A stretch of DNA of 40,315 nt, from assembly GCA_001642005.1 (NCBI GenBank), contig LWCA01000204.1:1-40315 (forward strand), read 5' to 3'. This document shows positions 1,303-29,234 of the stretch, piece after piece. Within the stretch, counting starts at the first letter, position 1. The number at the start of each line of letters is the position of its first letter. Source of the stretch: Intoshia linei. Taxonomy: Eukaryota; Animalia; Orthonectida. The position numbers and the translations under genes are program-made. The notes under the pieces were generated by a model, which was given only the letters and a program-made list of their open reading frames with translations, was not told the DNA's origin and did not search any database.

Positions 1303-2528
1303 ATGAATTATGTTGATATCGGCGTGGTTCTAGATACATCTGATATAGATGTATGTATTCATAATACCTTTTTTAACACATGTGGCACACTAGGTGCATT
1401 AGAAAAATATTTATGACTTAAAAAAAATTATATTAAAATATTTTTAAATTTTCATTTTAATTATTTTTCAAATTAGGTAACTTGTATATGTGAATGGACA
1501 AATGGAATTGTATTTGGATGCAGTAATGGGTAAAGACTGTCTTTATTTATGTATAATATTTAATTCTAGACAAATCTACGTATATCGATTGCACGGTGAT
1601 AATATCAATTTTAAGTTAATATACACTATACCAGTAAATAAAAAGGTATACGTACAATACAAGTATTTACAAAATTTTTAGAAAAAAGCTAAAAAAATAA
1701 ATGCAATTTGTTATTCAAAAAATAAAAGATATTTCATTTTTTCCTATGATGGAGGGATACACATAGCTCCCTTGGATCTCAGAAATTGTCCTGATATTAT
1801 ATCTACCAAGTTTAAATGCATATTAGGTCTGTGTATAAGTTTCACTAATGTATATTTTATTTATTAGTGTATATATTGATATATAGATTTGTTTTTTATC
1901 AAAAAAACATGTCATCACTTTTTGCTTAACCTTATCAGATAAAAAAACCCCCTTATCAAAAAAAGCAAGCATTACATTAACTGAAGATGTCATCAATATT
2001 GTAATTTCATTTTTTACACTATTCCACAATACACATTACTAATTCCGATTAGTAATAATCATACTAAATTTCACAATTTTAGATGTTGAATGATAATATA
2101 GCATGTGTTGCAACAAAACAAGGAAGTTATTCGTTAGTGGTCTGTGAAACTGGTCAAGTAACAAAATTATTCAACTGTAAATTGTATATGGATCCCATGT
2201 CTCGATGTTTTACGTCAATTGGTTTAATGGGATCTGATTTTATTTTGTTGTCAGAGGATAATACAATTTTTTTTATGGACGCACTGGGTTCAATAGTGAG
2301 AACGCCAATTCGATATGAAGGAACAGAAAATATCAAAAATATAGTGGTTTTAGATAAACAATTGATTATCCTTGTTACAAGCAATTCAATTTTAGCAAAA
2401 AAGTATTTTTTCAAATTTAAATCACTATAATGCACAATATTCACAAATAGGGCAATTTTCGCAAAATCTGATGACGATTTACTTCTTCTAAACCCTCGAA
2501 TAGATGTACCACAAAATATCGTCAACTG
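1303..2528 (+). other. CNH-like repeat 1 (intron-rich)
   Basis: VTCICEWTNGIVFGCSNGQIYVY...KKINAICYSKNKRYFIFS...ICFLSK...NIACVATKQGSYSLV...FILLSEDNTIFFMDALG...LIILVTSNSI. Confidence 0.75.
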
Positions 2529-5500
2529 GCACGTTGCATACTCTTTTTATTTATTATTTATTCTGGTGGTTCTTTAAATCAGTCAATTTTTTCATAAAAG
2601 TACATTATTTCTTCTCATTAAATTAATTAATATAGGAATTAATTTTAATCAAAATTTTAAATATTTTATTTTTATCTAATAATTTGATTATTGGGAATCT
2701 AAATTTGGGATATTCCACTAAATTCAAAATTGATTCAGGGCTATAAAAATGCATCACAGCTGTGATGGCCACCATGTACCAATTTATAAATTGACTCTTA
2801 TCATTTAACAGTTAAATGGTCAACCCATATCAATATTTATCTATTTTTAAATATTTCTATTTTGAACTATTCTTAATATTACATAAATTAACAGATTGTG
2901 AACTAATCGTCCTTAAAATTATCAAATTTTGTAAAAAAAGTGTCACTGACTAAAAAAGACCCTAATTGGTAGCCATACCCTTTTTCAGTTTTACTCTTCG
3001 AAAAACGTTTTTAGGAAAAAATATTTTGTTATAATAAAATTCAGAATACAAATATAATGTAATATACTAAAAAAATTTCGATATTACCTGCGCCATCCAG
3101 TTTTGAAAAACTGATTTTACTTACATGAAATAATAATACATTTTAGTATAAATGAAGAAGAAAACATTTTCCAACAAATGCCAGTGGAGAATATTAACGA
3201 ATATTGTAGTTTCTGTACTTGTAAAGATGTGATTTTGTTACCAGTGAAAGGTTACATTGTATCCCTGTCTGAAATAAAACACCAAACAACATGTAACATC
3301 AATGAAAACAGCAATTATACTGTTAAAAAAAGTACACTTTCAAAATATGACAATTTTTCAACGGTTGATTCTAAAATAGAATCCTGCCAAGAAGATTCTC
3401 TCGGTTCAATCTCTAAAACCCCTATTAAAAAAAAACAACCAAAAACTCTGTGGAACGAAATAATGAGTGCAAAAGGTCAAGATCAAAAAATTGAAAGTTT
3501 AAACAATAAAACTGATAAATATTTAAATAAAATTGACTCATTAAGCGTATCTGACAGTACACTCGATGAATCTCATCCATACGGTAAACCAATTATGAAA
3601 TCCAGTATACATATTGAAGAAAAATTTGAATCAAAAGAGCAAATATATGATGATATAAGAAAATCATCAATGAACAGAAAAGAAAGCAAAGCAACGGTTA
3701 AAGAAAATATTTTCAAATTAAAAATTAAAGATGAAAGTGAAATCATGAACGTAGAAATGGATGAAAATAACGATTTTGTAAGAAATAATTCAATCAATAA
3801 AAATATTAAATCAAACCAAATTGATGTAGAATCCATAAACTATGAAACTATGATTATAACAAGTTCAGATGAATCCTTGAATAGGGAAAATAAGGTTGAA
3901 ACAAATAATCAACAAGGACAAGAACCAGAACCAGAGTGTACAACGAATTCCCAATATAAAAATGAAATTGAGATTACTAAATTAACGGAAACAGTGAACG
4001 TTGAATCCTATTCAAACCAGGTAGTCGAAGGTTTGGTCACAGACCAATATATAGATGTTGATGGGATTGATGAAAATAATTGCAAATGTGACGACCCCGA
4101 AAATTTACAAATTGAAAATGTGGGTCGATTCAGTAGTTCAAGTAAACTGGATATAAGCAATGATATGTGCTCAGAAAATGATCCATTTGACAAAATTACA
4201 AACAATGAGTGTCAACTTGATAGTGTTAAATCTGAAATTTCAACAAGAAAAAGAAAAAACTCTGAAACTGAAAATGAGGACAAAATATCTGTGAAAACAC
4301 CTAAAGATGATAGTGTTAGTGAAATTGACAGGTATTTTAAATATCCCCATTATTTCTCAGTGGTTTTCAATATTTATACATTTTTAGATGTCTACCAGAT
4401 GTACCATGTAAGGTCAACGTTTTCCATAAAGAAATTAACAATCAGATTAGTCGTCACCCTTCAAAATCTTCAAATCCACCGATTTTACCTAAAAAAAATA
4501 AAATTATCGTGGAAGATCTTCAAATTATGTATAATGTTATTTACATGCCAATTCAGAGATCTAAACCTATTTAAATTATTCTATAGTATTTACATCAAGG
4601 TTTCCTACACTTTTTTTAACAGCAGACTGGTAATAAATTACAAAATTCATCGCGGACCATTAAAGCGATGTTACTAGGCAAAATTTTAAAAATTTTTCCA
4701 CGGAACGGCATTTGGGTAGCGCTGATTTACATGATTGTATGTATTCAATAATATTTTTAATTACTTTACTTTGAGGTACGTTGGAAACAGATCGTTGTTT
4801 GGAACGACCAGATCCCAAGTACTGTACACAGACTTGGGTCCTGACGACAAGTTTGTAAATTGTGACTTCAAATTTTCATTTTTCCAATTTGAGCATTTTT
4901 GAAAGTTATATTTTTGTATATCACTATTTGGTGTATCAATTTGAAACTTTCAATTCAAGACCCGTGTAGAGGTGGATATGCACTTTTTTGTGCTTTTACT
5001 TATTATTTGAACTTATTCTTTAAATTTGAGTTGCGGATTTTTGGAATTTACCCAAAAGCCTAGACCAGGCATTCTCATCTCTTTTTCGCTGTGGACCCCC
5101 AAAAAAATTAATAATAATGACAATTTTTAATGAATCATTACATTTGGGTGAAACGAATGATGGTCAAAAGACATGGAGTACTTTATTTTTGCGAGGTGAT
5201 AAACTTGATGAACTATTAATATTTACCTTTAACCCGTCAATGTTCCCAAAATGGAGCATGTTTTTCAGGTATAGTTTACAGTACATTATTAATTGTTTAC
5301 TACATATTTTATCAAATCAATAAAAAGTCTATATTATTTATCTTCCCTGTGAAAAATTAATATTTTATATCCCTTGGTTGATGTTTCATAGAATTATGAA
5401 TATTGACTGATTTTTTGTCCCATTTTCAATTTGAAATTTAAAGCTTTTTTTTTATGATTAGAAACTTGGCTCGGTCATAAATTTTAATAAAATAATTAAA

Positions 5501-8500
5501 TAAAACCGCTGCTCCTAAAATAGAACAATGGAAGTTTCCCAATAAGTTTTTACACTTGTAAGTAATTTAATTTAACACCAAGTAATTTACTTTTACATGA
5601 TTTTCACGTTTTATATTAGTATTTCTGAGCCTCTATGTTTTAAAAACGACTTTATGTTACTGAAAATGTCTATAATATGTAATAAATGTATATAATTTTC
5701 ATAGACCCCCAAATAAGTGCTGTGGACCCCGTTGAGAATGGCTGACCTAAACGACCGCTACATTATTATTTCAAAAATCTCACTTTTATCCCACCATTTA
5801 TAAAATTTAATAGTATTTAATAAAAAATACCATTTGAAACCTTCAGGGTAAAATCAAATTTATCGATATTTTTTTGAAAAATCCGATTTTACCAAACCTG
5901 ATGAGAAAAATCCACTTAATCCAACTCCAAAATAAAAAATCTAATTTTACCAAGTTCTTCGAGCATCGCAGAACATACCTTACCTCATTCCGAGGGGAGG
6001 GCGTATCGAAATTTTTGTGTAAAATGGGTCTCATTTTTTAAAATTGAACATTAAAATAATTTATAAATATAATAAATAATAATATATTTTTATATTGGAA
6101 TTTTTATGTAATTGTTTGTGATGTAAAGTAAATTTTAACAAAATACTTTTTATTGAGTTTGAAAATTTAAAAAGTACTTAGTTGTACTGCACTTAGTTAA
6201 AAAAACTAAGTTGAAAAAACTACTAGGGACTATATCACATTCTGCATAGTTAAGAAAAAAATTTTAAACCCAATTTTGATTTTCGAAGAACTGACCCTAG
6301 CATGGTAGGTTCGACTCTGCACATGACTAATATACAATTTACAGTATACATATTTAATTATATTATAGAAGCAATTTACTTGAGAATCAAGACAGTAAAA
6401 GATCTAGCTTGGATTATTCAAGTAATTAATAACTACAATTATATTTTATATTCATATTATTTACTGAATATATAATCTTAGGCAGTGATTACCAATTTTT
6501 ACAATTGGAGGTCGCATAAGCTCGAATAAAAAAATAAATGCAGATTATTTAAAATTTTTAATGTGGGAATTAAGTAAGTAATATAAATTGTAATCTGTGA
6601 TAAATTATCACATATATATCACATAATATACATTTTTATAATTTTAAATTAATTTCATAAATGATGTGATTAATGAAACAATATTTTTTATTTTTTACTT
6701 AATTAATGAGCCGAATGTACTTTTTAAATCTAGTAAGCGAATCAGTGTATAGCTAAGTTTCCCGCCGGCTCTCATGAAATTAAGCGCCATTATTATAATA
6801 TTGTTTACTATTGGTTTAAATTTTTTTCACTGCTGTTCGTGAAAATCTGGAATCAACCAGTATTATCAAGGAATTAGTATTTCCACCAATAATTAATAAT
6901 AATTTTTTAATTTGATAATATTTGAAGGATATCGGTTGGACCACAGAATATCAGATTACATGTCATTTAAAAAATGGAGATTACGTAAAAAAAACATGTT
7001 TTTAAATTGGCTCATTTTAACTTGCCATCGGCTTTTGTATATTATTTTTCAAAGCGAGAATTTAAAAAATTATATATCATAACCATTTCGTGTATTAAAT
7101 TTGAAATGTCCTTTTTAGAGCCTTGGAGAGGTGACTAGGGTTATATGATACTACGCATCAAAATGACGTCTGCCAATTTTTTTAGAGGTCTCTTTTCATT
7201 TTGGGTAGCTTCGAGTTTGGTAGATTCGGATTTGCCTGATATATAATATATCATTTTAAAATGTATGTAACGTAACGTAAAACTATTCAATTATTCACTT
7301 TGTTATTGAATTCATTTTAGAAAAAAAGGTAATTAAAATTTGTCTTAAAAAATTCAATTAATATGTAAATTCAAATTTATTATTTAGAGAACTCAATCAA
7401 AATTAGAAGAAATTAAGCAGATTAAAGATAAAATAAAATTTAAAATTCAACATAAACAAAAACAAAAGGTAAAAACTGAAACTCTAGAAAGTCTTGACAA
7501 ATTTGAAACTGGTGAAATCAATATAAATCAAGAAGAAATTTCAGAGTTGAGAAATAAAGGGTATTGTATGATTATGAAAAAAATAAAATAAAATTCATTA
7601 TTTTTACTTTAATCTTTATTATAGCGAAAAATCCACAATATTAAGAAAAAGTCATCCAAAAGTTCGAAATGCTTTTAGCAACATTAAACGTAAAAGCATT
7701 CAAGTATTAAATAATTTGAATGAAGATTTAAAGTAATATTTCAAAATAGAAAATATAATAAAACAGTGTTTCTTAGCCTTTTTTCATTTTGGACTTATAC
7801 AGAACGTAGGCTACGTCACGTATCTATAGGTTAAAATTAAAATTTGTAACATAGTACGAAATTTTATAACATTTCATATTTTTGAAAATTTAGTATTAGT
7901 ATAACTTTCAATATAAAACCAACATGCATCATATTAGTCAAAATTAATCGTTTCTGAACCGATAAACAAAAGATTTGATGTAAGTGAGAAAAATACAATT
8001 TGATGTTATTTATATTTACAAAAAAAATTTTTAATTTTTTATATTGATTTTCGCTAATTCATATTTTCCTATATTTTTTCAGAAACTAGCATAATTTTTA
8101 CAAAAGTCGTACGCGCAAATTTCAAGTTTTATAAATGGTTTTGGCAATGAATTTAGATTCATGTTCATCATTATCATAAATATTGCTCGGTTGTAATTTT
8201 GTTTATATATTTTTCTATGACCTTACTAAGAGAATCGGTTGAGACACACTGAAAATTATGGTTGAGACATTATTGAATATAATATGAATTATATGTATAT
8301 TAAATATAAGGTATGCTAAGTGTCGATATTTTTTTTGTTTTTCATACGTATCTTGCCTTTATCATTCCAAAATATTATTTACCAATCTGGAATATCCAAT
8401 AAACAGTATCTATCCTAATTTGAACCTGATCGTACCAATTTTTTTAAATATTATCACGCATCATTAAAAATTAAAATTTTAAATACTAAAATACTAAAAA

Positions 8501-11500
8501 TAACTATACAAATTACTATATTATTATCAATAAAATGTGGTTGATTTTAGCTTTCTAATTCATTGATTATTTTTTCCATTTCATTTCATTATTATTCCCT
8601 TGAAATAAGGATACAGATAAAAGTAACGATTTGATGAATATAAATGTAAACAGGGTGAGATTATTCATGTGATAACAAATATATATTACCTGTTATTACA
8701 ACAAAAAGAACAATTTGCGCCTATTTTATAATATGTCACTACAGTACTAAAATATAGGGTAACCATTGGTTACTAACCAATTTATGATTTTATTTCAATT
8801 ATAAACGCATTTAAGCGATATTTATAATGACAATTTAAAATAATTTAATTAGTAAAATAATACAAAAACACTTGAAAATTTACAAAAAAATTTTTACATA
8901 CAATTCGAGTAAAGTTTCATGATACAAAAATATTTGATAAATATATTATAATATATATATTGATAATAAATATATTATAAACAATAATTTATTGGCGCAA
9001 TATTGAGAAAAACAACAACAGGTAATATCTTATCGTAATCAAAATTGTTTTATTGACAATTTCAAATTTGTTAATAATTTAATTTGCGTAATTGGTGGAA
9101 TTGGTCTTGATAATATATATTTAGTATTAATAATAATAATAATAATAATCTAAACTATTTTTTAGAAACAATGCTCAACAATTAAAGCAAGCTTTCGAGG
9201 TACGTGAAGAATCAATAAAAGAAGAAATTGACTTTGAAATAAAAGAAAACATTGAATCTGATAGTACTAAGCTGATTTTATCTAAAAACTTAAATGATGA
9301 AACTTATCAAGATTTTGAAGTATTTGCAGATATTTATGAATCTCGAAATATACAAATTAGTGAAAACAAACATAAAGATAATGAAAATGAATTAAACGCA
9401 TGTAAAAATGTTATTGGAGACACAAAAATTGATATGTATAATGAAAATGTAGAACATTTAAAAATATTAGACAAAGATGAAATTGAAAGTGACGAAAACG
9501 ACGAAGTTAGTTCTATTAATTCCAATAACGACAATAATCAAAACATAGAAAATTCGCTAAATGCGTCTTGTGACAATAAAAAAAAGTGTAAATACCAAAA
9601 AAGAGATTCATATACTTCAATTGATAAAAGTGTCAATGAAAACCTGGATAACAAAATTCATATCTTCGAAAATTATTCCAATCACCAATCATTAAGTCAT
9701 TCAATCACAGAAATAGAAATTGACGATAACTCAACAATATATAATTCACAACTCAATTTTAACAAACTATCCAATATTTGTACAAAAATTGTAAAAAACA
9801 TGGAAGCGAAAATAACGTCTTTGACGTGTTGGGACGAGGGAATTTGTCTCGGTTACGAAGATGGTACTATAGAATTGTATAAATCAACTGAAAATAAAAG
9901 CAGTTTAACATTATATGATTCAAAAAACATTTACCCTAAAAGCATTGATTGTATTTCATTTTCTTCTAGCTTAAAATTGTTTGCTTTTGTTATGGAGGAT
10001 CATATATATTGCTACCCGATTGAATTCAAGGTTAATGAGCGTAATGAAATTTACCCAAATTTTATCAAAACCCTAGAAAAATGCAAAATTAAAACAATCA
10101 GTAAAATTATTCTCAATAAAAATGGTACGGAACTAATTTTTATCAATAAACAAACAAAGTTTATAATTTGTTCAATTGAACTTGGTAGAAAAAACGTATT
10201 AAACAAAATTAAAGAAATTTCTATTCATAATTCTATCACTAATTTTAATATTTTGGGTGATATCATTTGTTTTTCAACTAATGAAAATTTATATTTTCTA
10301 CTCAATATTATTGATGAAACTATACGGCCAATGTTTAATTGCAAAACTCAGAGTCATGATAACGGCTGTAGGGAATTTAATTTAATTAATTATCATTCTA
10401 CCTTAATTGCTGTGGATAATTATAATATTTTTTTATTATCACCTGACAATATGATCATTTTAATGGATCAACTGGGAATGGTCAATAAACCTCCTGTACA
10501 ATTGGCTATTGATGATTTTATTGAAAATGTTCATATTTTGTATGAAAATGTCATTGTTGTTACTACTCTTAATTATATCTATTATGGAATGTAATTTTTT
10601 AATTTATTTTTTAATATTTGCGTTCATTTTGCGGTACCTCTAGGGGTAACTGTGTTGCATTGAATTTTAATATTATTTAATTTTTTCAATACAAAATAGT
10701 TTATAATATACCGTTAAGCGTTTGTTTAATTTATAGGGCACGTTTTGTCCAACACTTTATTCTGAAACGTCAGTTAATGTTTGATTGATTTTTTTTTAGT
10801 TTTTTATTTGACTGACTTTACTGATTAAAATGGGACTCGTTGAGATAGAACTTCACTATCTTTAATTAACATGTAAAGAAATTTATAATACTATTTTTTA
10901 ATAAAAATTATAATTATAGGTTGAACTCTGAATGGTGTGATTTTAATAAAATTTTAATTGTTAAAGAAAATTGTTCATATAATATTAAATGTAATTACAA
11001 CAACCAAATATTGTATGCTATAAATAATGCAATAATGCAAATCGGTTCAGAATATGAAGAAATTATGATAAATAATAATACAAATCAATTTATAAGCATT
11101 AAAGAATCGAAACCGACAATTAAAATTGAAGTAGAAAAAGTGACGGAGAATGAAAATGAAACTGAAAGTAAAATACGAGAAGACTTGAACATAAAATTGT
11201 TAAAAAATTTAAGGGATTACAAAATTAAAAGTTTCGCTATATGGGATGATGGAATACTTACTGGATCAGATAGTGGAATTTTAAAACTTTTTCAAAACGG
11301 AGATGAAACATTAGTATTATTGGATTCAGTGTTACTGTCCACTTACCGAAAAAAAGCAGCCAAAACAATCAGGCATATTTGTTACTCTAAATCTCGAAAA
11401 TATTTTATAATTTCATCCGGCACATATCTTCATATTTACCCTCTAAATGTACAATTGAAATCAAATCAAAACGTATTGTTTAATGAAGAAAAATGTGCAA

Positions 11501-14500
11501 ATTTTTCTCTGGATGATGAATCCATTAAAACTAAAATGAAATGTTTTGATTGTTTGAGATTATCTACCAATACTAAAACGTTATGTTTCCTTTCAAAACC
11601 CAATACGATTGTTCATTGTTCTCTGACTAATGATTTAAAAAACCCTATAAATAAGCTATCCATAATTGTATTGGATTATGATTTGTTAAATATGAAACTT
11701 TATCGAAAAATTGCATGTATCGCAACTTTAGCTGGATCTTATTCTTTGGTTTTTTTGGAAAAAAATAACCTTAAAAAATTGTTGAATTTCAAGACAGACA
11801 CCTCCAAAATAGTTATTCCACCGATAGGACAATGCTCTTCAAATTTTGTTTTGCTTTCCCCAGATAATACTATTAATATTTATGATATTAACGGCAAGTT
11901 GCAATACTCTCCAATCGAATTGGAGGAAACTAACATCAAAGAGTTGATTTTACTTGAATCAAATTTACTCATTGTTGTTGCTGCAAGCACTGTTCTTGTC
12001 AAAAGCATGTTGAAAGATAGTGACTTTCAGAAAACGAGTTTGGAAAATGAATCAGAGTGTGTTCTTGCTGGTGTTTCGGAGGATGTAACTTTTATGACTA
12101 GAGATAATGATATTTATCAGTTGTCCAATGTTTCTAATAAATGTCATGATGCTTCCAATTTAAGAATGCGACGTAGTTTAAAACTTTCCGCTAAATCTAG
12201 TATCAACAAAAGTCGACTGAGATCTGTTATTAATGAAGATTTTGTTACAATGAATTGTATTTATCAGTCTGAATCATTAGATATAACGGCGGTAGAAATT
12301 TGGAAAGTTGGGTTGTGTGTCGGGTTTAAGGATGGATCTTTAAAATTATGTTCTTATGAATTTCAAACAAATGATAAAATTTATCAATGTGATAGTAGGG
12401 AATTGTTCAATAAATTTGAGGTAATTTAATCTTTGATTTCATAATAATTGTATTAATACATTACATACCCGTTATGGACAATCTTGAGCGTAGCCACTTG
12501 TATTTGGGAAGTTTTTTGGTTATAAAATTTAGTAGGGGTTTAAGGGAATATTTTAAAAATATTTTGAATATAATTTTCGATCTAAAATATTGTAGGGTTT
12601 TAAGGGATCTTCAAAATTTTGATCGCAAAATTATCTTCAAAATCTTTAAAAATTTGCTTAAAGAAACCCACAAAAATTTCGTGAAAAAATCAATAATATG
12701 ATAAATTAGTAGGATCAATGATTATGTCGCTCTAAGACAGTGGTTTCCGATTGGGATCGCTGGACCCCATAGGTTACAAAACTATATGTTAGGTCCGTGA
12801 GATTCACATAAAATATTAAAAAACTTTTATTAAATTTTTATTATTTTTATAGGAGAATTTTTAATATTTATTACCGATTTGCCAAATGTTATGAATTTAT
12901 CCCAAAGCCTATACGACCGCTACATTCTTATTTCAAAAACCCACTTTTATGAAAATTTGCAGTGCCATAAGACTTATGGTATACACTTATGATAAGTGTT
13001 AATAAAAAATACCATTTCAAACACCCAAGGAATATTGACTTTAACCGATATTTTTTTGAAAAATCCACTTAATCTAATCTCAATATAAAAAATCCAATTT
13101 TATCAACCCTTAAAGAATAATGCTTTTTTCCAATATTTTTTTTTAAACGATTTTACCAAATCTTATGAGAAAAAACTGTTAATTTTTTCATAAATGTTTT
13201 GTATTTCATGTTTCCTTTTGAATCCAAAAAAATAATATTTTGAAATGCGGGTCCGTACACTATTTAATTGAGACCACTGCTCTAGAGAATTGACATCCCA
13301 TTGGTCATTTGTCAAATGTCAGTGTCAGTGTTAAATTACTAAATATGATTGTAATGTTGCATAATGATTATAAGTATAATCATTATTAATATAATAGAGA
13401 AAATCTTCTATTCGAAAAATAATATACGTAAATCGATTAAAATTGATGATTATTGCTGCAAAACAAAGATTATACATTTGGACAACTGTAAAAAAGTACA
13501 CTGAAAAAATGGAAAAATTTTTTGTTTTCAAAGATAATGCATACAAAACCAATTATGAATATCTCGATTTTTTAACCCTCTCATCTCAAGATGATTCGGT
13601 ATTTATTGATTAATTTGTCTTTTCAAAATTATTCTTATATTTAGATTACATTTTTGACCAATCGACGTTGTATTACTTATTGTAAATTGGTTAAGGGTGG
13701 AGATCGTTTGATTCACTTGGTACATAACATTCAATTGAAAACAAATGTTGTGAATATGAAAGTTAATGATAAATTTGCTTGTATTGCTACAGATGATGGG
13801 TTTTATTCTATTGTTTCCCTGGAAAATGCTACCATTAGTAGGCTTATCGCATCCAAATCATTTAAACCAGTTATTTTTAAATTAATATTAAAATAAAATT
13901 ATATGAGTCTATATCAGGGGTGTCAGACTTAATTTACGTGGCGGTCCAAATGTGAAAAAAATTATTACGCGGACCGATCGGACAAACGGACGCGGACGCG
14001 AACAAAAAATCTTTACTCAAACCATTATTAAACTAACATTTTTAATTAATTAATAAAATAAAATAAAATAAGACACAATAATAATGGAATAAGTATAAAT
14101 AATGTTAAAATTGTAATCAGGAATAAATAAATCATGAAAAATATATGAAAAAAAAAATATGTGTAAAAAATTTATATTATAATCAGGGCGCATAATTGAC
14201 ACCCTGATATAAAATTATATAATGATGTATATTTATGTTTTTTTATTATAGAACTCACCACCAATCGGAAACTATTCGTCTAATTTTATAACATTAACTA
14301 CAGAGTCAATGTTGGTTGTGGTAGATCATAATGGAAATGCAGTTTTTCCTCCTTTTGATGTTAAAGGTTCTAATATCAGTGATATAATTGTACTCCAAAA
14401 AAGTCTGATGATTATAGTAAATTTTAACTCAATTACGGTGAAACCTTTGACATATGAAACAAATGATTCTCAGAAGGTTATATTACACGGGAGTAAAAAT

Positions 14501-17500
14501 TATATTGTTTATCAAGACAATGCATTTATTTTTACGGTAGATCGTATTTATCGAACTATTGGTGTCAGTTTACAGGAAAGGACGAATAGATTAATCAAAT
14601 TAAATAGATTGAATGAAGCAATTAGTTCTTTGGAAAAAAGTTCATTATACAATACTTTATCAAATGATGAAATTATTATGTTTAAAAGAAAAATTGATTT
14701 CGAAAAGGCGATAAACTATAAAATTAATGGAGATTATGATACTTCTTTTAATTATTTCAAATTATCTAAAGAGGGTGTTATACCCATTATGGACCATTTT
14801 GTTTATTTGCTAAAAAATTATGAATTATGTGATATTGAACATCTTATTGATATACAGGAAGTTAAATCAGAAGCACAAATGCTGATTGATTTTATGAATA
14901 ATCAGTACAAGATTAATCACAAGGTACATTTTTAATGTTTACATGTATATAGTTTTTAATTACATTCAAAATGTTTGGCTAATTTGGATTAACGAGGTTG
15001 AGTGACTCAACCTTATATTGAGTCCTACCAACTGGTATGAGTTTGTCGCTTTAAAAACAAAAAACAATTACTTTATTATTTAAATAATAATAATAATTTA
15101 TTACACATTCATCTAAAATAAATCATAAGTTCACATTTAACAATTATAATTACTTAGGAAAAGGTCTAATTATATCATTTTATTACCAATCCATTTTGTA
15201 GAATTTAATATATCAAACCTTAAAGGTTTTCAATGCTATAATGACTTTTATGTTATTTATTTATCATTGTTTTAGTTTAAGGTCGATAAAATTTGCTTAG
15301 ATACGAGTATAACCACCCTAACCACGAATTTAAAAAATGTTTCTATACGATCCGAAACACGACGATATGACCATGTTCGGATCGTGCCGAATCATAGTTT
15401 GGAAGATACTGTCAACGGTACTGAAAAAATTTAAGATACTTGTATATATTGTTATAAAAAAGAGATTTACTCTTCCTTTTTTTAAAGTATATTTGAAATT
15501 TTTATGTTTGGTCTTTTTTAAAATTTTTGAGCTTATGCGGCTTCCAATCGAAAAGGATTGGCAGCCCTGGTTCGACATTTGATACATTTTTTTTAATTTT
15601 TATACATGTTATATTTTGAGATATTGCACCAATTTAATATTTATTTATTTTATAGAAACTCTGTCATGCTTTATCGATGATTTTGAATATTCTTTATGAT
15701 CCTATTACATTAGAAAAAATGTTGTTATCATTATTCAAATTTTCAAATTTAACTAAAAATAAGCGAATATCTACATCTCGAAATAGATTACTAAATACAA
15801 AATCTGGAGAATTTAGATTATATGATGTGAGTATAATCAATAAGTATAAAGAATTTTTGAACGATGAAGTGACAGATATTGACATGTATCTAACTTTAAA
15901 TAAGCGCTATTATGCCCTGGCCTTAGTAAAATTGCTTCAAATGGATAATCATACTGCAATGGATACGTTATTACATTTTATCGAACTTGGCGACGTTTAT
16001 GACTTGCATGGAATATTGCTTGAAAAACTGGACACTGAAATTTTTATATCTATATTTGAAAAATTTGATGATTATTACTTTTTTAGTAAATATGCAATTA
16101 AAATTATTAACTATATGAAAATGGATGTAATGAAATTATTAATTATGCAAAATTATTCTAAATATGTAAATAATGTACCTACATCTGAAAATTCTACACA
16201 TTGGGATTATGAAGGAATTATTCAATATTTAACAGATTATCCAGAAATACAATCAAAATTTATCATGTTTTTGTATGATTCCCGTAAAATAATGGTTAGT
16301 CATTTTAATTTACTAATTTAAAATTTGTTAATAAATATGTGCCGTATAAAGGGGCTGGATCTACTGGGATGCAAGTTAAAATAGGCAATTTCAAAGTGTT
16401 GCATTAGTTTTTGGGCCGATTTTCTAAATTTCATCATAATTTCCAATGAATTTAATTTTTTACTAATATTACTAATATACATTGTACAATGTATATTACA
16501 ATGGATTCGAGAAATGTTTGGAAGGATGATTGTATTTACTATTTGTATATATTAATTTTAAATTAGTTTCCTGAAATTGTCACAAAGTATATCTTGTTGC
16601 ATATTGAAAAAAATGAGGAAGTTTCAACTATTAGAATGAATTTGTTTCTATATTTTTGTTTATTTTAATATATATTTAGAAATAATCTCTTGACGAAATG
16701 CATATTTGACGAAGAGTTGGATAATTATGACTCTGAAGTAGTGATGGATGCTTTGGAAAAGTTTGATCAATTTTTTATTGAAAAAGCTACAATTTTAGCG
16801 AAAAGAGAACAATTTAGAAAATCGCTGGATTTGCTACTTGAAAATAATTTTCCTATTGATGTTATAGAATTATTTTGCAAATTTATACTTTATCGCAAAA
16901 AGTATGAAAATTTACAAAATAGCAAAAGTATGTATTCACATCTGATTAGTTTGATCAAAATAAGGTTAATATTTATATTTATACAAGTTCTTATGAAATT
17001 AAACTGTGTCACTTTACTGATTTCATTATAACAGGTTGAACCCACCTTTTTATTTCGTGTCCAATGTCTTGGCTAATTGCAATTTCATCATATTTTAAAA
17101 ATTGTCTTTCAGATTCTTGAAAAATAATAATTATTACATTATGTTATAACTTATCAGTTATAACAGTTTATTATATCCTTATATAAAACTGAATGTCTGT
17201 CTTTAATTATTTATAATAATCTAATTAATAGTAATATTCAAACTACAAATTTTTAATTTCTTTCCAGTTTTCACACTAGTATTTGAAATAATTTCTTAAC
17301 AAAATATATATAGAAAATGTACGTTGTACAATGTATATTACATAGGAATAATCAGGACTTTGATAATTAGATAAGAACATATGATGGGTAATCTACTAAA
17401 TCTTGGGGAAACTGTTTTTTTCAAGGTTTTATATTATATAGTTAGTAACATATCGTGTAGATTCAATAGTGGATCCGAACCAAAAGAAAATTGTAGAGCC

Positions 17501-20500
17501 TATATATCAGCTGTTTGACACGGCTCGTGTCAAACTTGCGGCACGTTTCAAATTTAAGTACAAAATGAAAAATTGCGTAGCAATAAAATAAAATCCGAAG
17601 GAATTAATTTATAAGATTTCTAACCATATCTCTTTATTGTAAATGTGTAGACGTTTAATGTACATTTTTTTGAAATTGTAGGATGAATATTTAATTTACA
17701 TTAATCAAAAACTTTGAAAAATATGGATTGGTATTATATTATTTTTCACCGGGAATGAGTAGATTTTTGGGGTTGAAATTTTGTATTTATATCAAATAGA
17801 ATAAGTTGTATAATCTTTTTTTAATTGTAGGACTGTTAATTATTTCAAATTTTTTGGTTTAATAAAATATTTTCGAAATTAAAAAAATATAAATACTAAA
17901 GTGCTTTTTTGACCATGAAGGCGTCACTTTATCAGATTGAATTTTTTTGTGTGTTTATTGGGTATAACTATCAACTGTATTTTTTTGAAATTCTAGGACT
18001 ATTTTCATTTTTTAAAAAAAAGGAAATCTGGGGTTTTGGTCGTTGAAAAAAATGTGCTTTTTTGAGGTTTTCATTTATTATAATGCTTATGATTTTAAAA
18101 ACTATCCTAGAATTTATGTTTTATAAGATTTTAAGACATGTTTCATTTTTAAAACAAAGAGTCGTTTGGGATTTGACCATGAAGGTGTGCGTTTCTGAGG
18201 CTGAGATTAACGACAATGTTAACGATTTTAATACGCGTCCTAGAATCTATGTTTTATTAAATTTTTGGATTGATTTTTTTTAAACAAAAGGAGAAATTGG
18301 GTTTTTGATCCTGAACAACTCAAATTCGGAAACTGAAAAATAGATTTAAACACGCTCTGGGAAAAAGTGCACTCTCTTGTCACACTCAGTGCACTGTTAT
18401 TTGATCATTGTTTTATCAAAAGTGAATCACACAATTTAGTTCATATTTGATATTTCTTATACATTTAAATTGTATTTTAGAGGATTTCCAAAGCCAATCT
18501 TATTGAATTTAATTAACAAGTACGGCCATTATCTAGACTTTTGCGAAACTGTTAACCATGTCGAAAATACTTGCAATATTTCCGATATGAATCATTTTAT
18601 CACATCTACAATTTCTCTTATAAGAGCCCAACAAACTCGACAAAAATTTATGAATCTTCTGGTCGATAAAAATTTAGATTTAAATATAAATTTTCTTTCT
18701 CAAAAGAAAAAGAGAAGTTTCAAAGTAAACAACCAAAGGTAATTATTGATACGTGATCTTGCTATATAAGTATATATCAGCGGTTCCCAACATAATTCAC
18801 AGTTAGTACCCCTACAGCAGCGGTTCTCAACATACTTCACAGTTGGTACCCCTAAACTAAAAAAAATATGATTTAGTACCCCATAATTATTTCTAAATAT
18901 TGTAACTATGATACCATTTGAAAAAAATCAAATAAAATAAATAGTTAGTTAAAGTTTAACTTAAACTACGTTATCAAAAATAGATACATAAATGTATTAT
19001 GAAATTTTAAAAATATTTATAATTTATGAATCATAAAGTGTGAGTCATAGGATGAGACGAACTGGTACCCCTAGGGGGTACCAGTACCCAATTTGAGAAC
19101 CGCTGCCCTGCACTGAAAAAAAAAACGATTTGATACCCATAATAATTTAAATTTAGTGTAACTATGATACTGTATAAATTAAAAAAAAATGAAAATTGTT
19201 AACTCACTTGACCAAAAATGGATATCTGAAAAATCGTTAATGGTTGAACTGACGATATAGTGACTGTAGTAAATATCCATAGATATTGACTATTTACTAA
19301 AGATATATTGATACTATATGTTACTATACTGTCCAAGAATCTTAATTATTATTGTATAATTAAACACCTACTCGAATAATCGACTTCTTTACAGTGACGT
19401 ACATATATTTAATATGCAACCTTAAAATTGCAGAGAGTATCATATCGACGTAAATACATAAGGAACTAAGTATATTGTTACGAATTAATTTTTATTTTCT
19501 ATTATTTTTGGCAATTTAAAAAATATCTATAATTTATGAGTCATAATATCAGACGAACGGTACCCCAAAATAATTTATGGTGTCCTTAGGGGTTCCATTA
19601 CCCCATTTGGGAACCGCTGGTATATATGAATACTAGACCAGATCATTGATATATGAATAATTGTAAGAAGTAAAATAACGGGAACTCTTTTACTACAATC
19701 ATGTTATTTTTAAATCTATGTAGAAATCAAATTAATTAATTTTAAAATGATTTCTATCTACTATACTAGGGCTGGGCACAATATGACCCACCGATCATTT
19801 GACAGCGAAAAATGGTGCCCACCCTGTATTACAGATAATTTTCCATTGGATAGTGTTGGTGACGTGTACGTACGAAACGCACTAAAACTTTAATAATTAT
19901 TATTAATAATAAAAACAATTATAATTACAATATTGAAATGTAATTTTTTTTAAAAATAAAATCTGAAATTTTGTCACGAATGGGTTTGGAGCAGAGCCGT
20001 TTTAAGGCATGGGCAATATGGGATGTAGCCAAGGGCACTCATTAAAAAAGGCCCCAAATTAATAAAAGTACTTTACACTTATATCTTAAAAAGACGCCCC
20101 CAATTTATTAAACAATACTTCACATTTATATCTTAAACAGTTTTTAAGTTTTGAAGTGTGGGAATTCAAATAGTTTAAAGAATCAAAGTTCTGGTAAATA
20201 TTCAATTTAAAATATATTTTACAATGTTCATCATATAATATGACATAAAAACTGTTTCAAATAATAATATTAAACATTAAAACCATTCTATTAAGTGAAT
20301 ATTAAAAAAAGAAAATAGGAAATTTTTGATTTTCTCTTATTAATTTACTGAAAAGGGCCCGAAATTTTTTTTATCGCTTCGCTCAAAACTTTAAAGGGCC
20401 TCCGGTTCTTTGCTTAGCCCAGGGCCATGAAGTGGCTTAAGACAACTCTGGTTTGGAGAAGTCTATATATCTACAATATTAGTTTATTAAAGCTCAGTTT

Positions 20501-20704
20501 AAGTTAAAGGGATGCCTCAGTTTCATATCACTAAATTTGTGAAGATTATGCAATGTAAATTTTATATAATAAACACTTTTTAGCAAGTGCAGTGTATGTA
20601 AAGAAGTCTTTTACGAACCAATATTTATTTCTCAGTACAATCAACGTAATAACGCGATAAATTTGAAGCATTTATATTGTAACAATCTTAATTTAACCAA
20701 ATAA
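1303..20704 (+). CDS. TGFBRAP1: Giant TGFBRAP1/Vps3 (Vps39-family) protein with four CNH-like beta-propeller repeats, long disordered linker, alpha-solenoid and C-terminal Vps39_2-type zinc finger (about 2,642 aa, 23 exons)
   Basis: Phase-compatible exon chain: 1303-1350, 1477-1529, 1570-1645, 1682-1849, 1887-2000, 2083-2402, 2451-2528, 3147-4331, 4388-4528, 6369-6421, 7321-7328, 7388-7560, 7625-7732, 9166-10590, 10920-12420, 13398-13598, 13645-13869, 14252-14923, 15656-16294, 16567-16643, 16680-16964, 18481-18738, 20584-20704 (7,929 nt, no internal stop). Last exon KCSVCKEVFYEPIFISQY...HLYC resembles the TGFBRAP1/Vps39 C-terminal CxxC...F.EP.F...H..C finger; SLQERTNRLIKLNRLNEAISSLE matches the helix after the CNH domain; FFIEKATILAKREQFRKSLDLL is clathrin-repeat-like. 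TGFBRAP1 rather than VPS39 rests on the C-terminal motif only. Confidence 0.8.
5066..5744. mobile_element. hAT MITE inserted into another repeat
   Basis: TIRs CAGGCATTCTCA / TGAGAATGGCTG, subterminal GCTGTGGACCCC at both ends, degenerate TSD gcctagac/acctaaac; empty site seen at about 12900-12930. Confidence 0.75.
5745..5970 (+). repeat. Dispersed repeat family B copy
   Basis: ACGACCGCTACATT.TTATTTCAAAAA...AATAAAAAATACCATT...GAAAAATCCACTTAATC shared with 12912-13110. Confidence 0.75.
7764..8251. mobile_element. hAT-like MITE
   Basis: Imperfect TIRs CAGTGTTTCTTAGCC / GGTTGAGACACACTG; no clear TSD. Confidence 0.5.
9790..11045 (+). other. CNH-like repeat 2
   Basis: ITSLTCWDEGICLGYEDGTIELY...DIICFSTNENLYFLL...FLLSPDNMIILMDQLG...VIVVTTLNYI; boundaries approximate. 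Confidence 0.75.
11190..12130 (+). other. CNH-like repeat 3 (intronless)
   Basis: IKSFAIWDDGILTGSDSGILKLF...KTIRHICYSKSRKYFIIS...LCFLSK...KIACIATLAGSYSLV...FVLLSPDNTINIYDING...LLIVVAASTV; boundaries approximate. Confidence 0.75.
12738..13279. mobile_element. hAT (Charlie/Buster-like) MITE carrying repeat family B
   Basis: TIRs CAGTGGTTTC / GAGACCACTG; TSD ctctaaga/ctctagag, close to the NTCTAGAN Charlie target preference. Confidence 0.7.
13915..14206. mobile_element. hAT-like MITE
   Basis: TIRs CAGGGGTGTCA / TGACACCCTG with GC-rich subterminal GCGGTCC/GCGGACC motifs; TSD degraded. Confidence 0.6.
17700..18370. repeat. Dispersed repeat family A (Helitron-like non-autonomous element), copy 1
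   Basis: Shares long blocks (CACCGGGAAT..., TTTTGACCATGAAGG, GCTGAGATTAACGACAAT, GAAACTGAAAAATAGA...ACACGCTC) with 32358-32850, 37025-37285 and 39700-40110. Confidence 0.8.
18778..19619. mobile_element. hAT MITE (outer) with a self-nested copy
   Basis: TIRs CAGCGGTTCCCAA / TTGGGAACCGCTG; perfect 8-bp TSD gtatatat. Confidence 0.88.
18818..19105. mobile_element. hAT MITE (inner), same family as its host element
   Basis: TIRs CAGCGGTTCTCAA / TTGAGAACCGCTG; TSD ccctacag/ccctgcac; first 37 nt nearly identical to the outer element. Confidence 0.85.
19992..20450. mobile_element. hAT MITE
   Basis: TIRs CAGAGCCGTTTTAAG / CTTAAGACAACTCTG; perfect 8-bp TSD gtttggag. Confidence 0.85.
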
Positions 20705-20812
20705 ATGTATTTACATGTTTAAATTCCGATAAATGTCATTAAATTGTATTGATTTGTTGAAAATGAATTGATCAATTCTGTAAATATTGGAGTTGAGGTA
20801 AGGTATTTTGAT

Positions 20813-21187
20813 TTAAAGGATTTTATTAACATTCTTGTTCAAACGACGCATTTGCATTTTGCGTACAAAAAAAATTATTATAAATAATAAAAGGTATATA
20901 AGACAAGTGAAAAAGCAATTATTGGCTACGCCTTTGTATTTTTCTTCAATATATTCAATGTTATAATTTTGTTTTTTCCAGTTTTCATAATTGATAGGTA
21001 AATCATCAAAAAGCGCCATTGATTTTATATTAAAAAATAAACCAAGGAACGCCTAAAATAAATGAAAATGAAAGTAAACTGTTGAAAATTTACATCTCTC
21101 TAATTAATAAATTACCATCATAACAAATCCCCATAAGCTTATGACTGTAACAGCTACGAATAATTTGGTACCTATTATAAACCTCAT
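20813..21187 (-). CDS. RNASEK: Ribonuclease kappa / V-ATPase Vo subunit f, two-TM protein, 103 aa, 2 exons
   Basis: Exons 21187-21116 and 21052-20813 joined by a GT-AG intron give MRFIIGTKLFVAVTVISLWGFVMMAFLGLFFNIKSMALFDDLP...KYKGVANNCFFTCLIYLLLFIIIF, matching the RNASEK pattern (G.KL...S.WG..M...LG.FF...S..L..D.P...Y..V..NCF....Y). Confidence 0.9.
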
Positions 21188-21687
21188 CAATTGTATATAA
21201 AATCAATATAAAGAAATAAACTATATCTTCCAAGCAATAATGTTATTAGTTTCAGTATTTAGTGCAATGTGTACACAAGTCAGCAAAAACTAAATCTATA
21301 TGAAATGTGCAAATTTACAAATAAACATAAAATATTAAGATTTATTCGATATTGATATCGATAGTGACAAATAAATGATTATTGATCAGTATTGAAATCT
21401 AAATAAAAATTATAATACTGGATATATGTATCTTGGATATCTTCGTATTAATGAGAATTTAAAATTTTCAGTTTGAATGACAAATTTTGATTATTTTCAA
21501 TTAAAGCAATTATAACTACATTATATAACAAGGTACCTTTTTTAAACTAACTATTGAAATTTATCCATCACGTATTTACATATTTAAAGTTTGTCAGAAA
21601 TTTAAAATATTATTTAATCGTATGTTTTTTTTACATTATAGTTGTCAGAAGTACGCTGAATATTTTATTTTTTAGACTGAAAAATTT
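21188..21687. promoter_or_regulatory. Putative bidirectional promoter between RNASEK and SMURF
   Basis: Head-to-head start codons 500 nt apart; a DRE-like palindrome TATCGATA at 21356-21363 is weak evidence in AT-rich DNA; probable SMURF 5' UTR intron (donor about 21533, acceptor 21675). Confidence 0.45.

Positions 21688-29234
<7,547 letters not shown>

What the first reader, a model, noticed from the sequence alone, without database searches (positions are those of the whole stretch)
1303..20704. Giant TGFBRAP1/Vps3-like tethering subunit with four tandem CNH beta-propellers
Seen: four mutually similar ~300-aa blocks share the ordered motifs I/V-x-x-x-x-x-W-x-x-G-x-x-x-G-x-x-x-G, IxY/F, CFLSK/TFLTN, IACI/VATxxGxYSL/IV, FxLLSxDN..MD/YD..G...P and LIIV. 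They lie in one open, phase-compatible 23-exon frame ending in a Vps39/TGFBRAP1 solenoid and zinc finger. Established: Vps39 and Vps3/TGFBRAP1 are roughly 850-1,050 aa with a single N-terminal CNH propeller and are the Rab-binding arms of HOPS and CORVET. Inference: a ~2,640-aa four-propeller version could be a lineage-specific multivalent or long-reach endosomal tether engaging several small GTPases. I know of no described protein with this architecture.
Basis: partly seen in the sequence, partly recalled or inferred. Interest (0 to 1): 0.85.

Follow-up and report, generated by a model that had tools for sequence, protein, structure and literature searches.

The report
Giant four-propeller Vps39-like tether gene
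In the tiny parasitic animal Intoshia linei, one expressed gene encodes a 2,595-residue relative of the endosome/lysosome tethering subunit Vps39/Vps3 that has four beta-propellers instead of one, an arrangement I found described nowhere and which the public annotation hides inside a wrongly fused gene model.

Summary
Window 1303-20704 (+) is one gene of Intoshia linei. My model has 22 GT..AG exons, a 7,788-nt CDS and 2,595 aa with no stop. Stop-free runs in this DNA average 12 codons.

One spliced 8,456-nt transcript contig joins the block-1 exon (ends 4331) to block 2 (starts 9166).

The four ~300-aa blocks are clearly homologous (alignment z 21-55, 19-34% identity). They share intron positions, so the propeller was duplicated inside the gene.

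Block 3 folds as a seven-bladed propeller. Its best structural match is the Vps39 N-terminal domain (Z 25.0), but this is tied with generic WD40 propellers. Pfam and profile comparisons do not recognise CNH, Vps39_1 or CHCR.

Family assignment rests on three things:
- the architecture;
- a collinear alignment of the ~555-aa helical tail with the genome's canonical 876-aa Vps39-type paralog (z about 6);
- a strong match of the last ~105 residues, including CxxC...HxxC (z 10.7).

Whether it is orthologous to VPS39 or TGFBRAP1/Vps3, and whether it acts as a multivalent tether, remains untested. Verdict: a new variant of a known kind.

The parts
1303..20704 (+). Whole coding gene: 22 exons, CDS 7,788 nt, 2,595 aa. 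Exons: 1303-1350, 1477-1529, 1570-1645, 1682-1849, 1887-2000, 2083-2402, 3147-4331, 4388-4528, 6369-6421, 7321-7328, 7388-7560, 7625-7732, 9166-10590, 10920-12420, 13398-13598, 13645-13869, 14252-14923, 15656-16294, 16567-16643, 16680-16901, 18481-18738, 20584-20704.
   Evidence: The spliced translation has no internal stop, and all 21 introns are GT..AG with GTA/GTT donors and TAG acceptors. Seven junctions, the two of the 8-nt micro-exon among them, are read directly in RNA contigs. The 8,456-nt contig equals 33 nt 5'UTR + 7,788 nt CDS + 635 nt 3'UTR.
1303..3282 (+). Propeller block 1 (aa 1-305). It is encoded by six small exons plus the first 136 nt of exon 3147-4331. Introns are tiny: 126, 40, 36, 37, 82 and 744 nt.
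   Evidence: Homology to blocks 2-4 gives z 25.8, 54.9 and 30.3. It carries the only Pfam CNH hint (E 0.072, profile positions 138-230, exon 2083-2427). Its last blade lies in the same exon as the linker.
3283..9790 (+). Coding span for a ~720-aa polar linker (aa 306-1024), probably disordered, between propellers 1 and 2.
   Evidence: N+K+E+S+D+Q make up 59% of residues. The hydrophobic fraction is 0.20-0.35, against 0.42-0.55 in the blocks. No Pfam family was found. It stays in frame through RNA-confirmed exons.
4388..7732 (+).
   Evidence: Joints seen in read laying: 4331>4388, 4528>6369, 6421>(6 extra A)>7386, 7560>7625 and 7732>9166, all in the one 8,456-nt contig of run X1 and partly in X2 and X3. 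The micro-exon is flanked by TTTTAG and GTAATT.
9791..11067 (+). Propeller block 2 (aa 1025-1340). It has one intron (10591-10919), in the same position and phase as the last intron of block 1.
   Evidence: The A2 profile matches it at E 1.7e-111, by construction.
11200..12147 (+). Propeller block 3 (aa 1385-1700), intronless. It lies in the same 1,501-nt exon as the linker and the first blade of block 4.
   Evidence: AlphaFold2 model: pLDDT 76.1, pTM 0.74, all-beta, about 27 strands. Best structural hit is 7zty_A, the Vps39 N-terminal domain: Z 25.0, rmsd 2.6 over 273 residues. Foldseek returns WD40 propellers at E 1e-11.
12265..14572 (+). Propeller block 4 (aa 1740-2040), directly followed by the solenoid. 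It has three introns, two of them at block-1 positions.
14573..18738 (+). Coding span for the alpha-helical solenoid (aa 2041-2555).
   Evidence: The tail including the finger (aa 2041-2595) aligns near-globally and collinearly with residues 301-876 of the canonical paralog: score 126; full shuffle 61.6 +/- 10.4, window shuffle 67.5 +/- 11.0, 0 of 1,000 of each kind reach it; unrelated controls score 45-73. Exon 15656-16294 is predicted all-helical, but at pLDDT 42.
20584..20704 (+). Last exon: C-terminal zinc-finger-like motif (C-x2-C ... H-x2-C) and stop codon.
   Evidence: The acceptor is CTTTTTAG and the phase is compatible with donor 18738|GTAATT. The last 125 aa against the paralog's last 125 aa score 100, versus 33.8 +/- 6.2 (z 10.7, 0 of 2,000 shuffles). 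This alignment runs across the 18738|20584 junction.
20705..21339 (+). Inferred 3'UTR, with three contig ends near 20720, 21241 and 21339.
   Evidence: Contig lengths downstream of 9750 (4,772, 5,293 and 5,391 nt) minus the 4,756 exonic nt. Each inferred end lies 15-26 nt after an AATAAA. These are inferred, not read directly.

Best explanation
Window 1303-20704 is one expressed, single-copy gene of the orthonectid Intoshia linei. It encodes a 2,595-aa member of the Vps39/Vps3 (TGFBRAP1) group of HOPS/CORVET subunits. Its N-terminal seven-bladed propeller has been multiplied to four copies by duplication inside the gene. The layout is: propeller 1, a ~720-aa polar (probably disordered) linker, propellers 2, 3 and 4 separated by 45-55-aa linkers, a ~515-aa alpha-solenoid, and a terminal CxxC...HxxC finger.

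Shown: one spliced transcript, one open frame, homology among the four blocks, shared intron positions, the propeller fold of block 3, and homology of the C-terminal ~105 aa and collinearity of the tail with the genome's canonical Vps39-type protein.

Inferred: the C-terminal helix and finger dock on Vps11 of the HOPS/CORVET core, as in Vps39 and Vps3. The propeller array at the distal tip contacts membranes, small GTPases or adaptors. The extra propellers would give more contact sites, and propeller 1 on its long linker would give extended reach.
For: RNA: one 8,456-nt contig (run X1) is spliced at six places in the laid stretch and runs from 3850 to 9750. A further 1,515 nt lie upstream and 5,391 nt downstream, matching 33 + 7,788 + 635 nt of the model.

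Copy number: the locus is single copy with no retrocopy.

ORF: 2,595 codons without a stop, where stop-free runs average 12 codons.

Repeats: z 21.6-54.9 between blocks. Intron positions are shared between blocks 1 and 4 (two positions, phase 0) and between blocks 1 and 2 (one position, phase 2).

Fold: pLDDT 76, pTM 0.74. The top hit of 48,161 chains is the Vps39 N-terminal domain 7zty_A, Z 25.0, rmsd 2.6. The nearest language-model clusters are all propellers, including VPS11_N and Vps41.

Tail: score 126 against the paralog tail, with 0 of 1,000 shuffles of either kind reaching it. The last 125 aa give z 10.7.

Paralog: it is a Pfam-verified Vps39-type protein, with CNH 2.5e-15, Vps39_1 1.1e-11 and Clathrin 2.7e-9.

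Genome context: a Vps8 TPR match above cut-off shows that a CORVET-specific subunit is retained. The other CNH loci are not Vps39-like; one carries C1 + CNH.

Literature: Vps39 and Vps3 sit at the distal end of HOPS/CORVET and anchor by a C-terminal helix to Vps11, plus a RING-like domain in Vps39 (PMC11187117, PMC9592082).
Against: No Pfam CNH, Vps39_1, Clathrin or zf-Vps39_C hit passes threshold, on single exons or on the joined public protein.

Profile-profile comparison of the blocks with the paralog or with the genome's CNH domains gives nothing.

The structural match to Vps39 is within 1 Z unit of many WD40 propellers. The block profile's best PDB sequence hit is RACK1, E 2.6e-4.

Exons upstream of 3850 and downstream of 9750 were not read in RNA directly; only contig lengths support them.

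The contig of run X3 lacks the 8-nt micro-exon. That would break the frame at about aa 720, so some transcripts may not encode the full protein.

The runs are not labelled as RNA on record.

No orthologue exists to test for selection on the extra propellers.
Confidence: 0.72

Rival explanations
1. The locus is two or more adjacent genes: a block-1 gene ending near 4331, and a three-propeller gene starting after it. They are merged only on paper.
For: The public model P0001 starts at 5117 and omits block 1. Run X3's long contig starts exactly at 9166. A Met lies just before block 2.
Against: One contig crosses all joints from 3850 to 9750 with GT..AG introns, and the frame stays open. P0001's first exon lies in a high-copy repeat with at least 1,440 first-look candidates in the genome. 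The last blade of block 1 and the linker share one exon.
Confidence: 0.05
2. It is a real single gene but not a Vps39/Vps3 relative. It would be a lineage-specific multi-WD40 protein whose helical tail and terminal finger resemble Vps39 only superficially, or a relative of another class C Vps-type subunit such as Vps8, Vps41, Vps11 or Vps18.
For: There are no significant Pfam or profile-profile hits to CNH or Vps39 domains. WD40 proteins tie with Vps39 in fold search and lead in sequence-profile search. The only finger hits are weak RING-type ones, E about 0.09.
Against: The terminal 105 aa match the canonical paralog at z 10.7, at the same position and across the finger. The whole tail is collinear with the paralog tail, and controls score 45-73 against 126. 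The tail lengths are almost equal (~555 against ~576 aa). The single best structural hit is the Vps39 N-terminal domain.
Confidence: 0.18
3. It is a genuine Vps39/Vps3 homologue, but the extra propellers and the long linker are neutral or only structural baggage of a fast-evolving genome. The protein would act like an ordinary single-propeller subunit, or the added parts would serve an unrelated lineage-specific role.
For: The blocks have diverged to 19-34% identity. Intoshia sequences are extremely divergent: the only significant hit in 1.84 billion representatives is the gene's own public model. Predicted Rab5 sites of Vps3 and Vps8 lie on the solenoids, not the propellers (PMC11187117).
Against: About 6 kb of extra coding sequence is kept open and spliced in frame, where random stops fall every ~12 codons. 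Core strand motifs are kept in all four blocks. Introns have been lost in blocks 2 and 3 without damage to the frame.
Confidence: 0.3

Closest known systems
VPS39 (Vam6), the HOPS-specific subunit
   Same: The order is N-terminal seven-bladed propeller, ~550-aa alpha-solenoid, C-terminal helix plus zinc-finger-like domain. The best structural hit of block 3 is the C. thermophilum Vps39 N-terminal domain. The finger is retained, as in Vps39.
   Different: There are four propellers instead of one, a ~720-aa polar linker, and 2,595 aa against roughly 850-1,050. The sequence lies below all Pfam thresholds. Orthology was not tested.
TGFBRAP1 / Vps3, the CORVET-specific subunit
   Same: It shares the same overall architecture. 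A CORVET-specific Vps8 match is present in the genome, so a Vps3-type partner could be expected.
   Different: Yeast Vps3 lacks any extension after the long C-terminal helix (PMC11187117), whereas this protein has a finger. Drosophila has Vps8 without Vps3 (PMC4935465), so the presence of Vps8 does not prove a Vps3. Nothing here separates a Vps3-like from a Vps39-like origin.
Intoshia linei canonical paralog (G000:C3125 1467-4097 minus strand, 876 aa; part of public protein A3Q56_06656 = P0003)
   Same: The tails are collinear and the C-terminal ~105 aa are significantly similar. They come from the same genome.
   Different: The paralog is intronless, has a single propeller, and is recognised by Pfam. 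The blocks of the giant gene show no significant similarity to its propeller.
Proteins with tandem WD40-type propellers (for example Aip1 and the EML proteins, seen among fold hits)
   Same: Several seven-bladed propellers sit in one chain. A WD40-like W..G...G..DG..L[YF] first-blade motif matches RACK1 at E 2.6e-4.
   Different: Those proteins have no Vps39-type solenoid or finger. Here the propellers are beads on linkers attached to a tether-subunit tail.

Membership tests
Vps39/Vps3 (TGFBRAP1) family of HOPS/CORVET subunits | N-terminal CNH-type domain recognised by sequence (Pfam PF00780) | tested here: not met
   The best hit is E 0.072, 13.4 bits, against a cut-off of 26, for exon 2083-2427 only. 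There is no hit on the joined public protein or in the whole-genome scan. hhalign against the genome's own CNH domains gives probability 0.2%.
Vps39/Vps3 (TGFBRAP1) family of HOPS/CORVET subunits | N-terminal seven-bladed beta-propeller fold like the Vps39 N-terminal domain | tested here: met
   The AF2 model of block 3 has pLDDT 76.1 and pTM 0.74. 7zty_A ranks first of 48,161 chains, with Z 25.0 and rmsd 2.6 over 273 aa, but is tied within 1 Z unit with WD40 propellers.
Vps39/Vps3 (TGFBRAP1) family of HOPS/CORVET subunits | Alpha-solenoid carrying Vps39_1 (PF10366) and a CHCR/Clathrin repeat (PF00637) | tested here: inconclusive
   Pfam gives no hit. The tail is helical but was predicted only at pLDDT 42. 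A collinear alignment with the Pfam-positive paralog tail scores 126, reached by 0 of 1,000 shuffles of either kind.
Vps39/Vps3 (TGFBRAP1) family of HOPS/CORVET subunits | C-terminal Vps39-type zinc finger at the very end (PF10367) | tested here: inconclusive
   PF10367 gives no hit. The motif C-x2-C...H-x2-C is present in the last 39 aa. It aligns with the paralog's finger inside a z 10.7 alignment of the last 125 aa.
Vps39/Vps3 (TGFBRAP1) family of HOPS/CORVET subunits | Assembly with Vps11 into HOPS or CORVET, and binding of Rab/Arl GTPases | not testable with these tools
   This needs co-purification or binding assays. No complex prediction was run, because the joined tail cannot be given by reference.
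Canonical WD40-repeat proteins | Significant Pfam WD40 repeats | tested here: not met
   Only sub-threshold hits were found: WD40_2 E 0.01-0.028 and Beta-prop_EML_2 E 0.0017, all far below cut-offs. The PDB profile hit to RACK1 (E 2.6e-4) covers two blades only.

The most novel reading that the evidence does not exclude
All four propellers are working contact modules, for small GTPases, lipids or adaptors. The protein would then be a HOPS/CORVET arm with multivalent capture: one propeller cast out on a ~720-residue flexible line and three stacked next to the core. This long-reach, high-avidity endosomal tether design is unknown in any other eukaryote, and it evolved in an animal with one of the smallest metazoan genomes.
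Probability: 0.3. Interest if true: 0.75.

Novelty: new variant of a known kind. Interest (0 to 1): 0.55.

Why it matters
HOPS and CORVET subunits are conserved across eukaryotes, and to my knowledge their architecture is rigid: one propeller, one solenoid, one finger. A version with four propellers and a very long flexible linker would be a natural experiment on how reach and valency at the tip of a tether affect membrane capture. It arose in a drastically reduced parasite genome, where added coding length is unexpected.

There is also a practical point. The public record hides this gene. Its model A3Q56_02278 starts in a repeat, omits propeller 1, skips the zinc-finger exon and is fused to the neighbouring NEDD4-like ligase. 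UniRef therefore names it a HECT-type E3. Comparative surveys of trafficking genes in orthonectids would miss it.

Tried and rejected
1. An extra exon at 2451-2532 was rejected. It had looked similar to other blocks, but no phase-compatible donor leads to the good acceptor at 3146. Joining 2402 directly to 3147 is in phase, aligns better with block 3, and fits the contig length.

2. The public exon 19770-19869 and the read-through into 21676 were rejected. Using that exon puts the last exon out of frame (QVQCM-stop). Exon 21676 follows an in-frame TAG and carries its own ATG at 21688. The X1 contig ends near 21339. That exon was not matched by the repeat family found at 19992-20450, so its nature is unexplained.

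3. phmmer of window:10870-12426 against 1.84 billion representatives gave only the gene's own public model, plus one chance hit at E 2e-4.

4. Word-indexed searches with the paralog and with two regions of P0001 returned only the query proteins themselves.

5. tblastn and BLASTP of the paralog against the window or P0001 gave nothing significant, although weak HSPs fall in concordant positions.

6. hhalign of the blocks against the paralog or against the CNH alignment A3 gave nothing.

7. The PDB sequence search with the paralog found only Vps18 at E 0.36. P0003 hits Rae1 through a fused N-terminus.

8. The atlas search of the solenoid exon gave ankyrin-like noise at 0.85.

9. The single-sequence fold of exon 15656-16294 had pLDDT 42, so no fold search was run on it.

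10. The joined spliced protein was sent to no search or fold tool. Searches were made exon by exon by reference, or through the public protein P0001. The joined model was built only inside local scripts, to check the frame and to align the blocks and the tail.

Full report
**Source and context.** The window is the whole 40,315-bp contig C429 of a 41.6-Mb, 3,520-contig assembly with about 25% G+C. Two database proteins encoded in the assembly are named 'Intoshia linei' by NCBI: A3Q56_02278 (P0001) and A3Q56_06656 (P0003). The organism is therefore the orthonectid Intoshia linei.

**The observation.** I built a spliced model from three kinds of evidence: splice consensus, similarity between blocks, and RNA contigs.

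- Block 1 is split by very small introns (126, 40, 36, 37 and 82 nt) with clean GTA..TAG ends.
- After exon 2083-2402, the only phase-compatible route to the strong acceptor at 3146 is a direct join to 3147. This join also aligns well with block 3.

The final model has 22 exons, 7,788 coding nt and 2,595 aa, with no internal stop and GT..AG at all 21 introns. In this window, stop-free runs average 12 codons (95th percentile 38). The three longest runs (481, 519 and 520 codons) are exons of this gene.

**One transcript.** The look-up of sequencing runs returned three runs of one 2024 study that hold 88% of the sampled words of 9167-12420. The missing share equals the 329-nt intron. Laid on 3850-9750, their contigs are spliced.

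In run X1, a single 8,456-nt contig covers these segments in order:
- 3850-4331
- 4388-4528
- 6369-6421
- six extra A followed by 7386-7560
- 7625-7732
- 9166-9750

It has 1,515 nt further upstream and 5,391 nt further downstream. The 'six extra A plus AG' is an 8-nt micro-exon at 7321-7328, flanked by TTTTAG and GTAATT, and it restores the frame.

The model predicts 1,482 exonic nt from the ATG to 3849 and 4,756 nt from 9751 to the stop. That leaves a 33-nt 5'UTR and a 635-nt 3'UTR.

The three contigs end at inferred positions 20720, 21241 and 21339. Each lies 15-26 nt after an AATAAA. This is modest support that no exon is missing or extra downstream.

The locus is single copy with no retrocopy, so the spliced contigs derive from RNA even though the runs carry no library label.

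Limits of this evidence:
- Exons outside 3850-9750 were not read directly.
- Run X3's contig joins 6421 to 7388 without the micro-exon. If real, that breaks the frame near aa 720.

**The repeats.** The four blocks are aa 1-310, 1025-1340, 1385-1700 and 1740-2040.

- They align over their full length, with z-scores of 21.6-54.9 against shuffles and identities of 18.6-34.1%.
- Blocks 1 and 4 share two phase-0 intron positions.
- Blocks 1 and 2 share one phase-2 position.
- Block 3 has no intron.

It means the propeller was copied as genomic DNA inside the gene, and introns were lost later in the middle copies.

A profile of the blocks finds nothing else in the genome at E <= 1.

Between blocks 1 and 2 lies a ~720-aa stretch with 59% N/K/E/S/D/Q and low hydrophobicity.

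**What the blocks are.** By sequence they are almost orphans.

- phmmer against 1.84 billion representatives finds only the gene's own public model, plus one chance hit at E 2e-4.
- Pfam gives CNH at E 0.072 for one exon and sub-threshold WD40-type hits.
- hhalign against the paralog and against the genome's Pfam-positive CNH domains is negative.

By structure, block 3 is an all-beta seven-bladed propeller. It was folded with the other blocks as a shallow alignment and gave pLDDT 76.1 and pTM 0.74.

- Foldseek returns hundreds of WD40 propellers.
- An exhaustive comparison with 48,161 representative chains ranks the C. thermophilum Vps39 N-terminal domain first (7zty_A, Z 25.0, rmsd 2.6 A, 273 residues).
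- Language-model neighbours are all propellers, including VPS11_N and Vps41.

**What the tail is.** Pfam sees nothing in the tail, on single exons or in the joined public protein. The genome contains one canonical family member: an intronless 876-aa ORF on contig C3125, with CNH 2.5e-15, Vps39_1 1.1e-11, Clathrin 2.7e-9 and zf-Vps39_C 0.021.

- The giant protein's tail (aa 2041-2595) aligns with the paralog's residues 301-876 almost end to end. The score is 126, against 61.6 +/- 10.4 for full shuffles and 67.5 +/- 11.0 for window shuffles. None of 1,000 shuffles of either kind reaches it. Unrelated controls and the reversed sequence score 45-73.
- The last 125 residues score 100, against 33.8 +/- 6.2 (z 10.7; 0 of 2,000 shuffles).
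- That alignment runs through the 18738|20584 splice junction and pairs the two CxxC...HxxC fingers.

This is the strongest evidence for family membership, and it also validates the last junction.

The other CNH-positive loci in the genome are not Vps39-like; one carries C1 + CNH. A Vps8 TPR match above cut-off shows that a CORVET-specific subunit is retained.

**Public annotation.** P0001 (2,809 aa) maps to 5117-29231. It has four faults:
- Its first exon lies in a ~680-bp interspersed repeat with at least 1,440 first-look candidates.
- It omits propeller 1.
- It replaces the finger exon by 19771-19869.
- It runs on into a C2-WW-HECT (NEDD4-like) gene, whose first mapped exon follows an in-frame TAG and holds an ATG at 21688.

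**Mechanism.** In HOPS and CORVET, Vps39 and Vps3 sit at one distal end. They anchor through a long C-terminal helix to Vps11, plus a RING-like domain in Vps39, and they carry the N-terminal propeller at the flexible tip. The complex-specific subunits set Rab specificity (PMC9592082, PMC11187117).

By analogy, the tail of this protein would dock on Vps11, and the propeller array would face the target membrane. Extra valency and reach are an inference only. AlphaFold modelling in the CORVET paper places the predicted Rab5 sites on the solenoids.

Whether the giant gene is the VPS39 or the TGFBRAP1/Vps3 counterpart could not be decided. Drosophila shows that Vps8 can exist without Vps3 (PMC4935465).

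**Novelty.** No paper in the library mentions two, three, multiple or tandem CNH domains. No giant relative was detectable. An InterPro-type architecture census could not be run. I rate this a new variant of a known kind: real, expressed and unusual, but with function untested.

Noticed in passing
window 5032-6016: A high-copy interspersed repeat of about 680 bp: at least 1,440 first-look candidates in the genome, the 40 scored at 84-95% identity. It sits in the 4529-6368 intron and has very high, polymorphic RNA contig depth. The public gene model starts inside it.
   Followed up: partly
window 19992-20450: A second repeat family (336 first-look candidates, 77-90% identity) in the last intron.
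   Followed up: partly
window 19714-19890: A unique, G+C-richer open stretch used as an exon (19771-19869) by the public model. It is incompatible with the finger exon's frame and was not matched by the repeat family found beside it. Its nature is unknown.
   Followed up: partly
window 21676-29231: A neighbouring NEDD4-like E3 ligase gene with C2, WW and HECT domains (HECT E 2.4e-88). The public protein A3Q56_02278 fuses it to the tether gene. Its first mapped exon follows an in-frame TAG and has an ATG at 21688.
   Followed up: partly
window 7321-7328: An 8-nt micro-exon (AAAAAAAG) needed for the frame. It is present in run X1's contig but absent from run X3's contig, which would truncate the protein near aa 720. 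This may be alternative splicing or an assembly artefact in an A-rich stretch.
   Followed up: partly
G000:C3125 (L007 1467-4097, minus strand): The public model of the canonical Vps39-type paralog (P0003, 1,034 aa) carries an N-terminal piece matching mRNA export factor Rae1 (E 7e-26, residues 20-153). This is probably another fused annotation.
   Followed up: no
G000 contigs C1491/C2709, C62/C2511, C3149/C1457: Clathrin heavy-chain repeats occur on pairs of contigs with near-equal coordinates and scores. This suggests uncollapsed haplotypes or duplicated contigs in the assembly.
   Followed up: no
window 1351-2082 and 16644-16679: Introns of only 36-40 nt (1530-1569, 1646-1681, 1850-1886, 16644-16679) sit beside introns of 0.9-1.8 kb, at least two of which hold repeats.
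   Followed up: no
window 20700-21339: The three inferred transcript-contig ends each fall 15-26 nt after an AATAAA, which suggests alternative polyadenylation. The 3'UTRs would be about 16, 537 and 635 nt.
   Followed up: partly
G000:C1831 (L005 1417-2550, minus strand): An open frame with a C1 domain followed by a weak CNH match, resembling a citron/MRCK-type kinase tail. It is not related to the tether gene.
   Followed up: partly
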